Shown in pieces: positions 5,240 to 8,795 of a stretch of 64,000 nt of DNA. This stretch comes from Podarcis muralis (lineage: Eukaryota): the NCBI RefSeq assembly GCF_964188315.1, contig NC_135656.1:111166001-111230000 (forward strand), read 5' to 3'. The position numbers and the translations under genes are program-made. The notes under the pieces were generated by a model. It had not been told where the DNA came from. It worked only from the letters and a program-made list of their open reading frames with translations, and searched no databases. Each line of letters begins with the position of its first letter. Position 1 is the first letter of the stretch.

Positions 5240-5656
5240 ATGGCTTCAGACTCTCTCCATGAGTTCCCTGACCAGATTTGTTCCATCTGCAAGCAATGCT
5301 TCGACGATCCTGTGACTATTGACTGCGGGCACAATTTCTGCCAAGCCTGTCTCCCCTCGCTGCCTCACTGGGGAGAGCCCAACAGAGACCCTTCCTGCCT
5401 GCTGTGTGGCGAAACCGTCCACCAAAGGAACTTCAAGCCCAACCAGCAACTGGCCAACCTTGTGCAGCTTGTCAGGAAACTTCAGGAGGGGGCAAAAAGA
5501 GATGCGGAAAGGAAGGAAGTGAGCAAGAGTCACCAAGAAACCCAGAGGCTCTCCTGCAAGGAGGTTCGAGCCCCCATCTGTACCGTGTCCAAATGCAACA
5601 AGGAGGACAAAATCCAAGATGTGGTTCCTGCAGAAGTGGCCGCTCAAGGGTCCAAG
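5240..5656 (+). CDS. TRIM-A exon 1: RING finger 1 (C3HC4) plus degenerate B-box2
   Basis: ATG in a Kozak context (gccATGg). CSIC-x11-CGHNFCQAC…CLLC, then 'RNFKPNQQLANLV'. B-box ligands are substituted. Phase-0 donor aag|GTAGGA at 5657; 139 codons. Confidence 0.85.
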
Positions 5657-6971
5657 GTAGGAGGTCTCCACGAAGGAAGAGGACAGGGAAATAATTGGGT
5701 CTTCTTCNNNNNNNNNNNNNNNNNNNNNNNNNNNNNNNNNNNNNNNNNNNNNNNNNNNNNNNNNNNNNNNNNNNNNNNNNNNNNNNNNNNNNNNNNNNNN
5801 NNNNNNNNNNNNNNNNNNNNNNNNNNNNNNNNNNNNNNNNNNNNTGTGGGTTCAATCCCCATGTTGGGCAAAAGATCTCTGCATCACAGGGCATTGGACT
5901 AGATGACTCCACAATTCTATGATCCCATGGTATTCCATGTACACTTTCATGAGGCCATTTGAGCTGCAGGGGGAAACTGAGACTTCTTTTTGTTACTTTG
6001 GGGGCCTGGGGGTTAAATTCGAACACCTTTTGTAGGGAGGGAATGTGGCAGTCGAGCGTGGTGGAGGTTTTCCTCTTTTGGCTAACTTCAGAACACCTTG
6101 CCATCACTTCTAGGAAAGGTTCAGCCACTGCCATTGGCCATATTTGGGGGAATAGCAGAATAATCTTGGGTACGAGACTAAATGATGGCTAAGCAACCCT
6201 TGAGCTGATTTTGAGGGCATGCAGGGGGCTGGACGGGACAAGAGAGGGAGAGGAAGCCTCACTGCATGTGCAGAAATCTGTTGCCCAAGCAGAGATGCTT
6301 TCAGCCCATTGTCAGGAACATCCCGAGGGAAAGTTGTTAAAGTCTCCTTGTGTCCAAAGTGTAGGAACTGATAAAAAGAAGTTCTGCAGGCGTGTAACTC
6401 CAGGCATGTAGGATGTTGACGTGTGTTTTAATCTGGGTTTTGGCTTATCCTTGATTCTAATTAATTTCTAAATGTTGTAAATAGCTGCTTTTATCTCTCT
6501 CCTTTTGCCACTATTATATATTTTTTTAATTTTTGTAAATGACTTTGAGGTTTTATTACAACCAAGCGGGATAGAAACCTTTTGCAATAAATATGGATAA
6601 ATAACAAATGCTTAAACCAATCTATCAGCCACCATCCAACACACCCTCAAAATAAAAACAGACCAAAATCACAACATAGCTAAATGCATCGGCAAATTGG
6701 GGTCCATATTTGATCTGTTAAATCTGAAGCTTTGTTTCTGACACCAGTTACTATAATGGGGAATTTTTAAATGGCTATAATCTCTCTTCCTTTTCACATA
6801 AGTGAGTGAAATATCTGAAGGGCTGTTATGTACTAAGCTTGGATCCTAGAACAATAGGCAAGTAGGATCCTAGAATGCTACAACTGATTGGCTTGCAGGA
6901 AAAGACCAATCAGGCTCCAGGAGGGAAGCAGAATCAGCCAATCAGACAGGACTCGTTGTGTAAATAATGTA

Positions 6972-7500
6972 CCGTATTTTTCGCTCTATAGGACGCACCC
7001 GACCATAGGACGCACCTTGTTTTAGAGGGGGAGAACAAGGAAAAAAATCCCCCCCTCTCTGCTCAGCGCCCCTTCAGCGAAGCGGAAGGAGAAACGGAGC
7101 CCCTTCCATTTCTCCTACCGCTTCGCTGAAGGGGCGCCGCGCAGCTCTCCCTCTCTGCTGAAGCCAGGAGAGTCTTGCTCTCCTGGCTTCAGCAAAAGGA
7201 ACCCGAAGCCTTTGGAGCTCAGCGCGAATTCCCGCTGCGCTCCAAAGGCTTCAGGCGGCTATCCCTGAAGCTTGGAGAGCAAGAGGGATCGGTGCGCACC
7301 GACCCCTCTCGCTCTCTAGGCTTCAGCGAAAGCAACACGAAGCCTCCAGAGTGTGGAGGGAGCGCTCCCTCTGCGCTTTGGAGACTTTGCGTTGCTATCG
7401 CTGAAGCCAAGGAGCCTACATTCGCTGCATAGGATGCACACACATTTCCCCTTAATTTTTGGAGGGGGAAAAGGTGCATCCTATAGAGCGAAAAATACGG
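6972..7500. mobile_element. Tc1/pogo-type MITE (TIR ccgtatttttcgctctata)
   Basis: TIRs with TA duplication. A related copy lies at 8889-9348. Confidence 0.8.
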
Positions 7501-8223
7501 TATATAAAAGCCTGAGGTTTGGGGGGCAATTCAACCACTGTTTTACAAGCTGCAATAAAGAGCATGAAATCACTACAGGACTCTGAATATATTTCAAGGG
7601 CTATGTCACATGCAAGAGGGAGCAAGTTTGTTTTCTCCTGCTCTGGAGGGTAGGATGCAAACCAATGGCTTTAAGTTACAAGAAAGGAGATTCCGACTGA
7701 ACATTCAGTCTGTTCAGCAGATTCCTACGAGAGGCGGTGGACTCTCCTTCCTTGGAGGTTTTTAAGCAGAGCTTGGATGGCCATCTGTCAGGGATGCTTC
7801 AGCTGAGATTCCTGCATTGTAGGGGGTTGGACTAGATGACCCTCAGGATCCCTTCCAATTCTATGATTGTATGAAATCTGCAGGCAAAGTTGCCCCTCCA
7901 GTGGGAGAACAATTCTTTGCCCAAGCAGAAATCCTTGTGCTGATGAAATGATTGCCTTAGTGCTATGTTGGATTCCATGCAATGTATTAGAGGACATGCA
8001 AGCCGACTCCATAGAAGTGATCTTTCTGGGCTGTTGGGAGAGGTGCTTTGTAAATTGCGGTGAACTGTGTATGTTTTTACCCGACTGCTATTTACGTTTC
8101 TCTGAATTCTGTTTTAAACTCTTTTAAGTCTCTTGGAGACCTCTGTGCAACAAGTGACTTCTTCTTCTTCTTCTTCTTATTATTATTATTCAAATAGTTA
8201 TTATCCTACAGCAATTTACACTA

Positions 8224-8460
8224 GTGTGGTGTAGTGGTTAAGAGCGGTGGACTCATAATCTGGGGAACCGGGTTCGCGTCTCCGCTCCTCCACATGCAGC
8301 TGCTGGGTGACCTTGGGCCAGTCACACTTCTCTGAAGTCTCTCAGCCCCACTCACCTCACAAGAGTGTTTGTTGTGGGGGAAGAAGGGAAAGGAGAATGT
8401 GAGCCGCTTTGAGACTCCTTCGGGTAGTGATAAAGCGGGATATCAAATCTAAACTCTTCT
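8224..8460 (+). mobile_element. tRNA-derived SINE (Squam1-type)
   Basis: tRNA-like head gtgtggtgtagtggttaagagc…gggttcg and an (tct)n tail. An antisense copy lies at about 38651-38882 and a headless copy at about 48820-49045. Confidence 0.75.
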
Positions 8461-8480
8461 AAAACATACCCATTCTGCAG

Positions 8481-8795
8481 GTGACTCAAGCTGCACCTCC
8501 TAACATCAATGCCACGGAGACCCCAGTTCCAGGCTCACCAACCACAAATGAGGAACAGGAAACCACTTGCTCCATCTGCAGGGAGTATCTTACAGACCCT
8601 GTGACCCTGGACTGCGGCCACAACTTCTGCCGGGGGTGCATCACCTGCTATTGTAAGATATTGGAAAATCAGGATGGGGGAGCGTTGAAGTGTCCTCTTT
8701 GCAAATCCCGGATCCAGAAGTGGAATTTTCGATCAAATGTGCAGCTGGCAGAAACAGTAGAAGGCCTCAAACTCCTTCCACTAAAATTATATAAG
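8481..8795 (+). CDS. TRIM-A exon 2: RING finger 2 (C3HC4), B-box absent; symmetric phase 0-0 exon without ATG
   Basis: Acceptor cattctgcAG|GTG at 8480 and donor aag|GTAAAG at 8796; 315 nt. CSIC…CGHNFCRGC…CPLC intact. Ends LKLLPLKLYK. No Met in frame. Confidence 0.8.

What the first reader, a model, noticed from the sequence alone, without database searches (positions are those of the whole stretch)
5240..8795. Tandem RING-RING, B-box-less TRIM protein
Seen: exon 5240-5656 (ATG, intact C3HC4 RING, dead B-box) ends in phase 0. The next TRIM-like exon, 8481-8795, is a second intact C3HC4 RING with an AG acceptor, no Met, and phase 0 at both ends. Only one set of coiled-coil exons follows. Splicing gives a 591-aa RING-RING-coiled-coil-B30.2 protein; skipping the symmetric exon gives an in-frame single-RING form of 486 aa. 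Established: TRIM5, TRIM21 and TRIM25 RINGs need to dimerise for activity, B-box2 drives assembly or autoinhibition, and engineered RING-RING fusions are used to mimic the active dimer. Inference: a natural pre-dimerised or splice-switchable E3 that no longer needs its B-box.
Basis: partly seen in the sequence, partly recalled or inferred. Interest (0 to 1): 0.8.

Follow-up and report, generated by a model that had tools for sequence, protein, structure and literature searches.

The report
Natural two-RING TRIM ligase in lizards
This wall-lizard gene really does make a TRIM ubiquitin ligase with two RING domains in a row and a decayed B-box; related lizards share the layout, so it is a natural counterpart of the RING-RING fusions that biochemists build to switch such ligases on.

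Summary

**What is shown**
- RNA contigs from three runs and raw RNA-seq reads join 5656 directly to 8481, then 8795 to 11812. RING1 and RING2 therefore sit in one mRNA.
- The N gap at 5708-5844 is intronic and is bridged by that RNA.
- The full model has 9 exons and 611 aa, not 591. It is identical to RefSeq XP_077777939.1, named TRIM10-like, from Podarcis muralis.
- Four other lacertid assemblies carry the same 9 exons without gaps. Two Salvator (Teiidae) proteins share the exon-2 borders.
- RING1, the coiled coil and B30.2 are RFP-like. Exon 2 is a captured first coding exon of a TRIM10-like paralogue: its Met is lost and it is cut just before its B-box.
- The resident B-box keeps 3 of 8 zinc ligands, has no Pfam hit, is disordered in AlphaFold2 and evolves near neutrally. 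Both RINGs keep all 8 ligands.
- RING1 has lost the linchpin R/K and the Pro of CPxC. RING2 keeps both.

**What is inferred**
- The two RINGs form a built-in asymmetric pair, with RING2 catalytic and RING1 the partner. AlphaFold2 supports this for the lizard protein but not for a Salvator paralogue.

**What is not supported**
- I found no evidence of exon-2 skipping.

The gene is already annotated, but I found no paper that describes this architecture. I rate it a new variant of a known kind.

The parts
5240..5656 (+). Exon 1 (417 nt, phase 0 donor): start codon, RING1 and the B-box remnant.
   Evidence: Translation. Covered by RNA contigs and reads. Identical to the start of XP_077777939.1.
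5279..5407 (+). RING1 core (C14 to C56), C3HC4 with all 8 zinc ligands. The last pair reads CLLC-G, so the Pro of CPxC and the linchpin R/K are both missing.
   Evidence: Pfam RING hits at residues 14-56. Ligands invariant in 13 aligned sequences. Residue statistics. pLDDT about 90.
5522..5617 (+). Dead B-box2 remnant (residues 95-126). The ligand positions read S-H-C-V-C-S-D-Q.
   Evidence: Alignment to RFP-like B-boxes. No Pfam hit. pLDDT 26-35. dN/dS 0.58-1.07.
5708..5844 (.). Assembly gap, inside intron 1.
   Evidence: Located. Bridged by the RNA joint 5656>8481. Orthologous introns in four other assemblies have no gap.
8481..8795 (+). Exon 2 (315 nt, phase 0 at both ends, no Met): a 29-residue linker that was once 5'UTR plus the start of a TRIM10-like gene, then RING2 with its C-terminal helix.
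   Evidence: Homology to TRIM10-like first coding exons.
8568..8702 (+). RING2 core (C169 to C213), C3HC4, ending CPLC-K. K214 aligns with TRIM5alpha R60 and so sits at the linchpin position.
   Evidence: Pfam hits. HMMER alignment to 4tkp_B. pLDDT about 90.
11812..11907 (+). Exon 3 (96 nt), start of the coiled coil.
   Evidence: The loose end behind 8796 in three RNA runs reads into this exon. Part of the model.
13037..13267 (+). Exon 4 (231 nt), coiled coil.
13388..13410 (+). Exon 5 (23 nt).
14648..14757 (+). Exon 6 (110 nt).
15497..15523 (+). Exon 7 (27 nt), encoding DSLEEALKK.
15798..15857 (+). Exon 8 (60 nt).
17654..18210 (+). Exon 9: PRY-SPRY (B30.2) domain and the stop codon.
   Evidence: Pfam PRY and SPRY hits..

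Best explanation
Shown. This is an expressed, intact 9-exon gene for a 611-aa class-IV-type TRIM ligase. Its layout is RING1, a dead B-box, a linker, RING2, a coiled coil and B30.2. The backbone (RING1, B-box, coiled coil, B30.2) belongs to the RFP/TRIM27-like group of squamate TRIMs. Exon 2 is a captured copy of the first coding exon of a TRIM10-like paralogue, sitting in intron 1. It starts in what was 5'UTR, has lost its start codon, and ends at a new donor just before where its own B-box would begin. It therefore reads in frame and is included in the dominant mRNA. The architecture is shared by five lacertids and by two Salvator (Teiidae) genes, so it most likely predates the lacertid-teiid split.

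Inferred. The two RINGs work as a built-in, unequal pair.
- RING2 keeps the E2-groove Pro and a basic linchpin residue, so it is probably the catalytic RING that binds and activates E2~ubiquitin.
- RING1 keeps its zinc fold and its hydrophobic helix residue but has lost both of those residues. It probably serves as the non-catalytic partner, as BARD1 does for BRCA1 or BMI1 for RING1B.
- Ordinary TRIMs bring two RINGs together only through B-box or target-driven clustering. Having the pair on one chain would remove that need, which would explain why the B-box was free to decay.
- The B30.2 domain would still choose the target. That target is unknown and may be viral.
For: Splicing:
- The joint 5656|8481 (GT..AG) is in contigs of 3 RNA runs and in 5 stranded raw reads.
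- One 1112-nt contig carries exon 1, exon 2 and 350 nt more, which begin with exon 3.

Gene model:
- My 611-aa model equals XP_077777939.1 exactly.

Conservation:
- The same 9 exons reproduce the annotated proteins of Lacerta agilis, Zootoca vivipara, Podarcis raffonei and P. lilfordi.
- Salvator P0005 and P0009 have the same exon-2 borders.

Origin:
- RING1, coiled coil and B30.2 best match the same RFP-like proteins. Exon 2 best matches the N-termini of TRIM10-like proteins.
- The alignment shows the lost Met and the cut before the B-box.
- In the tree, all RING2s fall in the TRIM10-like clade (100/98) and all RING1s among RFP-like RINGs (99/95).

Selection:
- All 16 RING ligands are invariant.
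- Between genera, dN/dS is 0.37-0.43 for RING1 in the two Podarcis comparisons but 0.75 for Zootoca-Lacerta; it is 0.13-0.39 for RING2 and 0.58-1.07 for the B-box remnant.
- Fisher p is 0.02-0.04 for RING1 in the two Podarcis comparisons but 0.75 for Zootoca-Lacerta. For RING2 it is below 0.005 in two comparisons and 0.056 in the third. The B-box remnant is not significant.

Asymmetry:
- Of 180 single-RING relatives, 87% have R or K after the last Cys and 178 have CPxC.
- Lacertid RING1 reads CLLC-G/S and RING2 reads CPLC-K.
- K214 aligns with TRIM5alpha R60.
- The linchpin role of the equivalent TRIM25 R54, and the activating effect of tandem RING constructs, are described in PMC4864278 and PMC7752041.
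- RING1 branches are much longer than RING2 branches in the tree.

Structure:
- The AlphaFold2 model of residues 1-250 has pTM 0.62.
- Both RINGs have pLDDT about 90 and residues 99-160 are disordered.
- It superposes across both RINGs on the single-chain RING1B-BMI1 fusion 6wi7 (Z 13.6, 155 residues).
- It also superposes on the fused RNF4 dimer 4ap4 (115 residues, rmsd 2.8 A).
Against: - No biochemical data exist. The catalytic roles are read from sequence alone.
- The AlphaFold2 model of Salvator P0009 gives pTM 0.36 and matches fused dimers through one RING only. The intramolecular pairing is therefore not a robust prediction, and AlphaFold2 may simply tend to pack like domains together.
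- In lacertid RING2 the residue equivalent to TRIM5alpha I77, a dimer-interface position, is Thr. Zootoca has a 3-residue deletion there, so the interface cannot be fully canonical.
- Selection on the whole gene is only moderate (dN/dS 0.44-0.51) and the counts per domain are small.
- A single origin of lacertid and Salvator RING2 is not resolved by the tree.
- The linker of about 110 residues would equally allow pairing between molecules.
Confidence: 0.5

Rival explanations
1. RING replacement in progress. RING2 is the only working RING. RING1 plus the dead B-box is a decaying leader, kept only because it supplies the promoter and the start codon.
For: RING1 has lost the linchpin residue and the E2-groove Pro. 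It sits on long branches in the tree. The adjacent B-box has decayed.
Against: All 8 RING1 zinc ligands are invariant in 5 lacertids and 2 Salvator genes, while the adjacent B-box lost 4 to 5 of its 8 in lacertids. RING1 dN/dS is 0.37-0.43 in the two Podarcis comparisons (0.75, not significant, for Zootoca-Lacerta), against about 1 for the B-box remnant. RING1 folds with pLDDT about 90.
Confidence: 0.15
2. The two RINGs do not pair within one chain. Either each recruits a different E2, for example one for priming and one for chain extension, or RING1 of one molecule pairs with RING2 of another. The second option would build head-to-tail assemblies that replace B-box-driven clustering.
For: The linker between the RINGs is long and disordered. 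The Salvator model shows no confident packing of the two RINGs. TRIM5alpha and TRIM21 use stepwise E2s and need three RINGs close together (abstract of PMC9675739; PMC7752041).
Against: The Podarcis model packs the two RINGs like known fused dimers. RING1 lacks the residues normally needed to activate any E2~Ub.
Confidence: 0.22
3. One reading: exon 2 is a cassette exon that switches the protein between a single-RING and a double-RING form.
For: Exon 2 is symmetric (315 nt, phase 0 at both ends), so skipping it would stay in frame and give 506 aa. Turtles have both two-RING and one-RING isoforms of an analogous gene.
Against: No skipping joint was listed. Contigs run straight through exons 1, 2 and 3. 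Exon-2 read depth is at least that of exon 1. None of the RefSeq or ENA models returned here for five lacertid species lacks exon 2. Only a few samples of unknown tissue were examined.
Confidence: 0.06
4. An artefact: two genes mis-joined across the gap, a gene-prediction fusion, or a pseudogene.
For: There is an N gap in intron 1. Many database 'double TRIM' proteins of about 1000 aa look like merged gene models.
Against: RNA junctions cross the gap. Four gap-free assemblies have the same order. The ORF is intact in five species with dN/dS below 1.
Confidence: 0.02

Closest known systems
Engineered tandem RING-linker-RING constructs of TRIM25, TRIM5alpha and TRIM21, and the fused RNF4 RING dimer (PDB 4AP4)
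   Same: Two RING domains sit on one polypeptide. In the engineered cases this gives a constitutive dimer with enhanced E2~Ub discharge (PMC4864278, PMC7752041). The Podarcis model superposes on 4ap4_A over 115 residues at 2.8 A.
   Different: This one is natural and conserved. Its two RINGs are different, coming from two TRIM subfamilies, and only one keeps the linchpin. The linker is about 110 residues and includes a dead B-box, rather than a short designed linker. Its activity has not been measured.
Heterodimeric RING pairs with one active partner: BRCA1/BARD1, RING1B/BMI1 and MDM2/MDMX
   Same: An active RING is paired with a folded RING that lacks E2~Ub-activating features. The best structural match of the model is the single-chain RING1B-BMI1 fusion 6wi7 (Z 13.6, both RINGs aligned).
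   Different: Those pairs are made of two separate gene products. Here both RINGs are in one chain, in a TRIM with a coiled coil and B30.2. The pairing is predicted only, and not for the Salvator paralogue.
Class IV TRIM ligases (RING, B-box2, coiled coil, PRY-SPRY), such as TRIM27/RFP, TRIM10, TRIM5alpha, TRIM21 and the squamate antiviral 'harbinger' TRIMs
   Same: The exon plan matches: 96, 231 and 23-nt coiled-coil exons and a terminal B30.2 exon. The gene lies in a TRIM cluster. Sequence identity to RFP-like proteins is 45-59%. Squamate TRIM expansions include potent antiviral ligases (PMC12262214).
   Different: There is an extra RING exon between exon 1 and the coiled coil, and the B-box2 is non-functional.
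Turtle TRIM39-like proteins with RING, B-box, RING, B-box, coiled coil and B30.2 (for example XP_039356670.1 of Mauremys reevesii)
   Same: A second RING-bearing exon is spliced in frame behind a first RING exon.
   Different: In turtles the second exon keeps its own Met and B-box, and a single-RING isoform is also annotated. In the alignment built here (A1) the turtle proteins are only 31-33% identical to the Podarcis N-terminus; whether their RINGs belong to the same subfamilies was not tested. I did not check RNA support for them here.

Membership tests
TRIM/RBCC class IV (C-IV) | N-terminal C3HC4 RING | tested here: met
   Pfam RING models match at 14-56 and at 169-213. All ligands are invariant. 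The unusual point is that there are two RINGs.
TRIM/RBCC class IV (C-IV) | B-box2 zinc finger (C-H-C-D-C-C-H-H) | tested here: not met
   No Pfam B-box hit for residues 86-139. Only 3 of 8 canonical ligands remain. pLDDT is below 35. RING2 is not followed by a B-box either.
TRIM/RBCC class IV (C-IV) | Coiled coil after the RING/B-box module | tested here: met
   Exons 3 to 8 are 43-56% identical to the coiled-coil regions of RFP-like and related TRIMs (the hits listed). Exons 3 to 5 have the typical lengths of 96, 231 and 23 nt. No dedicated coiled-coil predictor was run.
TRIM/RBCC class IV (C-IV) | C-terminal PRY-SPRY (B30.2) | tested here: met
   PF13765 PRY matches 429-477 and PF00622 SPRY matches 482-607, both above the gathering score.
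Active RING E3 (E2~Ub activating) | Basic linchpin residue after the last zinc ligand, and the Pro of CPxC in the E2 groove | tested here: met
   This row is for RING2. It reads CPLC-K214, and K214 aligns with TRIM5alpha R60.
Active RING E3 (E2~Ub activating) | The same two residues, in RING1 | tested here: not met
   RING1 reads CLLC-G57 (S in Zootoca and Lacerta). Of 180 single-RING relatives, 87% have R or K and 178 have the Pro.
Active RING E3 (E2~Ub activating) | Ubiquitin discharge or chain formation in vitro | not testable with these tools
   This needs purified protein and E2~Ub assays.
Intramolecular or heterodimeric RING pair (BRCA1/BARD1-like, or fused RNF4-like) | The two RINGs pack through their flanking helices into one dimer | tested here: inconclusive
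   Podarcis model: pTM 0.62, with both RINGs matching 6wi7 and 4ap4. Salvator P0009 model: pTM 0.36, with only one RING matching.

The most novel reading that the evidence does not exclude
Lacertoid lizards have kept, for on the order of 100 million years or more, a TRIM ligase that carries its own RING heterodimer on one chain. A captured catalytic RING (RING2) is permanently primed by a degenerate resident RING (RING1). This would make the enzyme active without target-induced clustering and would make the B-box dispensable. It would be a natural demonstration that RING pairing and B-box-driven assembly are interchangeable answers to the same activation problem. It may also be one case of a recurrent sauropsid strategy, since turtles have RING, B-box, RING, B-box forms.
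Probability: 0.35. Interest if true: 0.8.

Novelty: new variant of a known kind. Interest (0 to 1): 0.62.

Why it matters
In TRIM5alpha, TRIM21 and TRIM25 the RINGs sit at opposite ends of an antiparallel coiled coil. They become active only when clustering, often through the B-box, brings two or three of them together. Researchers mimic that state with artificial RING-RING fusions.

A conserved natural TRIM with two different RINGs in tandem and a B-box left to decay is an evolutionary experiment on that question. It can show whether a built-in RING pair replaces assembly-dependent activation. It can show whether one RING may turn into a pure helper. It can also show what an always-primed immune-type ligase costs or gains.

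It also shows how exon capture between clustered TRIM paralogues can create new ligase architectures.

All of this is directly testable with standard ubiquitination assays and structural work on a 245-residue fragment.

Tried and rejected
- **Mis-join across the gap:** rejected. The gap is intronic, RNA bridges it and four related assemblies are gap-free.
- **RING2 as an unspliced, transposon-flanked pseudo-exon:** this was my starting guess at 60%. The RNA junctions rejected it.
- **Exon 2 driven by its own promoter or start codon:** rejected. It has no in-frame Met, a stop lies 21 nt upstream, and every junction found comes from 5656.
- **A simple tandem duplication of the gene's own exon 1:** rejected. 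RING2 belongs to a different RING clade.
- **Zootoca isoform X2 (P0001):** its locus look-up found nothing, so I used isoform X1 instead.
- **Salvator loci:** not looked up. The two proteins (P0005, P0009) are listed with UniRef as their only source and with no contig, so no genomic check of their exon structure was made.
- **Literature searches:** searches for natural tandem, double or second RING TRIMs returned only engineered constructs and general TRIM repertoires. The library lacks most subscription journals.
- **ISRE search upstream of exon 1:** no ISRE core was found. Two GAS-like 9-mers were found, which is about what chance would give.
- **One junction per read-laying run:** with one read-laying run of at most 6,000 letters I could not cover 5656 and 11812 together. 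A skipping junction could therefore appear only as a loose end, and none was listed among those shown.
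Full report
**1. The observation**

The stretch 5240-5656 opens with ATG. It encodes an intact C3HC4 RING (C14 to C56) and then a region in the place of a B-box2, and it ends at a GT donor in phase 0. The stretch 8481-8795 follows an AG. An in-frame TAA lies 21 nt upstream of it. It has no Met, encodes a second intact C3HC4 RING, and ends at a GT donor after 315 nt.

A self-comparison of the window finds RING exons on the + strand at 5240, 8481, 42847 and 57698. 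It finds B30.2 exons at 17530-18210, 24982-25647 and 52658-53233. Only one set of coiled-coil exons lies between 8795 and 17530.

**2. The gap and the splice**

The N run at 5708-5844 begins 52 nt into the intron after exon 1, so it raises no reading-frame question. Two RNA run searches found runs of one species that hold about 90% of the exon-1 words. The same runs hold about the exon-sized share of a 701-nt stretch around exon 2.

I laid three such runs and one raw stranded RNA-seq run on 5240-11239.
- A GT..AG joint equal to 5656|8481 appears in one contig of each of the three runs, at word depths 717, 938 and 1238.
- The same joint appears in 5 raw reads with 5 different starts.
- One 1112-nt contig holds exon 1, exon 2 and 350 further letters.
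- The loose end behind 8796 in all three contig runs reads AAAGAACCCAGAGCCAGCTGAAGTC..., which is the sequence from 11813 onward.
- Raw reads lie on one strand only, as expected for a + strand gene.
- Raw-read depth on exon 2 (6.5 in a bin that is three-quarters exon) is not below that on exon 1 (3.3 to 5.8).
- No 5656>11812 signal was among the rows shown, but most loose-end rows were not printed.

Inclusion of exon 2 is therefore the dominant form and may be the only one.

**3. The gene**

I guided the model with a 607-aa hit from the representative search and read the splice sites directly. The result is a 9-exon model: 5240-5656, 8481-8795, 11812-11907, 13037-13267, 13388-13410, 14648-14757, 15497-15523, 15798-15857 and 17654-18210.

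All introns are AG/GT, and the ORF is 611 aa. The sequence is residue-for-residue identical to XP_077777939.1, 'tripartite motif-containing protein 10-like [Podarcis muralis]'. Skipping exon 2 would give 506 aa. Pfam finds two RINGs, PRY and SPRY, and no B-box.

**4. Conservation**

Orthologous proteins are annotated in Podarcis raffonei, P. lilfordi, Zootoca vivipara and Lacerta agilis. I fetched those four loci. In each, nine exons in the same order reproduce the annotated protein exactly. None has an N run. Intron 1 is 1.8 to 5.4 kb, and exon 2 is 315 nt (306 in Zootoca), always in phase 0 at both ends.

Two proteins of the teiid Salvator merianae (P0005 and P0009) have the same layout. The borders are the same too: '...K|V(T/S)Q...' at the start and '...(Y/H)K|E...' at the end. 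Neither has a Met or a B-box behind RING2. The architecture is therefore shared by Lacertidae and Teiidae. From my own knowledge, those families diverged well over 100 million years ago.

**5. Origin of the second RING**

I searched the five parts of the protein separately against all fetched proteins.
- RING1, the B-box remnant, the coiled coil and B30.2 find the same 'zinc finger protein RFP-like' single-RING TRIMs of about 480 aa. These come from geckos, an anguid and an amphisbaenian.
- Exon 2 finds the extreme N-terminus of 'TRIM10-like' and 'TRIM7-like' proteins.

The alignment shows how exon 2 relates to the first coding exon of that second subfamily. It matches from about 17 codons upstream of their Met to just before their B-box. 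The upstream part reads NKATETPSAMASAP in the relative against NINATETP---VPGSP here. At the downstream end the relatives continue into 'DLCxxHKExLHLFC', whereas the lizard exon stops at '...LKLYK|gt'.

A maximum-likelihood tree of 65 RING segments places all seven RING2s inside the TRIM10-like clade (support 100/98). It places all seven RING1s inside a clade with RFP-like RINGs (99/95). One origin for lacertid and Salvator RING2 is neither shown nor excluded.

In RFP-like relatives exon 1 ends '...EEASQEYK' and the next exon starts 'EKIQAQL'. Here exon 2 sits exactly between those two points. The event was thus the capture of a foreign RING exon into intron 1 of an RFP-like gene, not a duplication of the gene's own exon.

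**6. What decayed and what did not**

The table gives the residues at the eight B-box2 ligand positions.

| Sequence | Residues at the 8 positions | Canonical ligands |
|---|---|---|
| RFP-like relatives | C-H-C-D-C-C-H-H | 8 of 8 |
| Salvator P0009 | C-H-S-D-C-C-H-H | 7 of 8 |
| Salvator P0005 | G-E-C-D-C-C-Q-H | 5 of 8 |
| Podarcis muralis | S-H-C-V-C-S-D-Q | 3 of 8 |
| Other lacertids | varied | 3 to 4 of 8 |

All 16 RING ligands, by contrast, are invariant in every two-RING sequence aligned.

Pairwise dN/dS between lacertid genera is shown below.

| Region | dN/dS |
|---|---|
| RING1 | 0.37-0.43 (two Podarcis comparisons); 0.75 (Zootoca-Lacerta) |
| RING2 | 0.13-0.39 |
| B-box remnant | 0.58-1.07 |
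| Whole gene | 0.44-0.51 |

Synonymous change exceeds non-synonymous change significantly for RING1 in the two comparisons that involve Podarcis (p 0.02 and 0.04). In the Zootoca-Lacerta comparison it does not (p 0.75). For RING2 it is significant in two comparisons (p below 0.005) and borderline in the third (p 0.056). It is never significant for the B-box remnant. The counts are small.

Variants seen in the RNA runs are 6 synonymous and 1 non-synonymous in exon 1, and 2 synonymous and 4 non-synonymous in exon 2. None falls at a ligand.

**7. The two RINGs are not equivalent**

Of 180 single-RING relatives, 156 (87%) carry R or K directly after the last zinc ligand, and 178 have Pro in the final CPxC.

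The basic position is the 'linchpin' that holds E2~Ub closed. It is R54 in TRIM25 (PMC4864278). The HMMER alignment to 4tkp_B puts RING2 K214 on TRIM5alpha R60.

RING2 reads CPLC-K in all seven two-RING proteins. Lacertid RING1 reads CLLC-G or CLLC-S. Salvator RING1 reads CPQC-S or CPQC-G.

RING1 also sits on much longer branches than RING2. The lacertid stem is 0.43 against 0.13, and the Salvator tips are about 1.1 against 0.6-0.8.

The pattern reverses at one position. This is the one equivalent to the dimer-interface residue TRIM5alpha I77, whose I77R mutation kills activity (PMC7752041). It is Leu74 in RING1 but Thr231 in lacertid RING2. That position lies in a 3-residue deletion in Zootoca. 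Salvator and the TRIM10-like relatives have Ile there.

**8. Structure prediction**

AlphaFold2 on residues 1-250, with a 13-row alignment, gave the following.
- Both RINGs have pLDDT of about 85-95.
- Residues 99-160, which cover the B-box remnant and the former 5'UTR linker, have pLDDT below 35.
- pTM is 0.62.

Foldseek's top hit is the single-chain RING1B-BMI1 fusion 6wi7, aligned over 242 columns. VIA-align gives Z 13.6 over 155 residues spanning model residues 4-250. It also matches the fused RNF4 RING dimer 4ap4_A over 115 residues at 2.8 A. In this model the two RINGs are therefore packed like a canonical RING dimer.

The same procedure on Salvator P0009 gave pTM 0.36 and some strand structure in its better-preserved B-box. 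Fused dimers matched through one RING only. The intramolecular pairing is a lead, not a result.

**9. Mechanism**

The shown steps are these:
- a constitutively spliced, conserved two-RING TRIM;
- a foreign origin for RING2;
- neutral decay of the B-box;
- retention of both RING folds;
- loss of E2~Ub-activating residues in RING1 only.

The inferred steps are as follows. RING2 is the catalytic RING. RING1 is a structural or priming partner, in the manner of BARD1, BMI1 or MDMX. Placing both on one chain provides the RING pairing that ordinary TRIMs reach only by clustering. That would relax selection on the B-box.

The main rival is that pairing occurs between molecules, or that the RINGs act separately with different E2s. 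The idea that RING1 is a mere leader is weakened by its invariant ligands next to a decayed B-box.

**10. Comparison with what is known**

Tandem RING constructs are an established tool, and they enhance the activity of TRIM25 and TRIM5alpha. Five full-text searches and three targeted reads found no paper describing a natural tandem-RING TRIM. The library lacks most subscription journals.

The gene itself is in RefSeq under a generic name. It fails the B-box criterion of the tripartite motif, so strictly it is a TRIM-derived RING-RING-CC-B30.2 protein. I classify it as a new variant of a known kind.

Database proteins with two or more RINGs are common (77 of 263 fetched). Most are models of about 1000 aa that join two complete TRIM units (RING, B-box and B30.2 twice, or RING and B-box two or three times) and may be merged neighbouring genes; I did not check them. 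Turtles, however, have a consistent form of about 630-665 aa with RING, B-box, RING, B-box, coiled coil and B30.2, seen in five or more species.

**11. Earlier notes of this scan**

Note s1-184769 concerns the second B30.2 exon at 24982-25647. I did not test whether this gene uses it. An Ensembl-derived protein (P0007) joins a chimeric RING, an intact B-box, an exon matching 22594-22704 and a B30.2 that is 93% identical to that exon. This hints at a separate or remnant gene rather than an alternative end for the gene studied here.

Noticed in passing
window 22594-22704 and 24982-25647 (+): A second B30.2 exon, and a small exon upstream of it, match the Podarcis muralis Ensembl protein P0007 at 89-93%. 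The RING and B-box part of P0007 is not in the window.
   Followed up: partly
protein P0007 (UniRef A0A670HWP1, Podarcis muralis): Its RING is chimeric. The first half is nearly identical to RING2 of this gene, and the second half plus the B-box is RFP-like. This suggests gene conversion or recombination between RING exons in the cluster.
   Followed up: no
L005 3001-3408 and 19867-20373 (Mauremys reevesii); proteins P0004, P0164, P0169, P0178, P0190: Turtles have TRIM39-like genes whose products run RING, B-box, RING, B-box, coiled coil, B30.2. The second RING-B-box exon lies 16 kb downstream of the first and keeps its own Met. A single-RING isoform is also annotated. I did not check RNA support.
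   Followed up: partly
window 5129-5238 (+): A long (AGAC/AGAA)n and (GAAA)n microsatellite ends 1 nt before the start codon. RNA contigs extend at least 29 nt upstream of 5240, so it is at least partly in the 5'UTR.
   Followed up: no
window 5011-5019: A palindromic GAS-like site, TTCCAGGAA, lies about 230 nt upstream of the ATG. No ISRE core was found in the 1.2 kb upstream. The number of hits is compatible with chance.
   Followed up: partly
window about 8223-8459, and 6968-7500 / 8890-9350: A tRNA-like SINE ends 21 nt before exon 2. Copies of another repeat (ccgtatttttc...ataggacgcac) flank the exon at a distance. These stretches draw very deep, multi-copy RNA signal and false joints in read laying.
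   Followed up: no
window 23753-24664 (-): A 303-aa ORF lies between the two B30.2 exons. It resembles no TRIM part and looks like part of a transposable element. I did not search it.
   Followed up: no
window 42847-53233 and 57698-64000 (+): Two further TRIM genes lie in the window, each with a single RING exon, coiled-coil exons and (for the first) a B30.2 exon. Their RING exons are 40-45% identical to exon 1.
   Followed up: no
window 5272-5506 and 8542-8783: Thirteen single-base differences between the assembly and the RNA runs fall in the two RING exons. An older RefSeq model (XP_028573440.1, 594 aa) is only 94-98% identical. This suggests high within-species diversity at the locus.
   Followed up: partly
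L002 (Zootoca vivipara) exon 2, 12207-12512: Zootoca has a 9-nt deletion that removes three residues (TVE) from the helix after RING2, at the position of a known TRIM dimer-interface residue.
   Followed up: no
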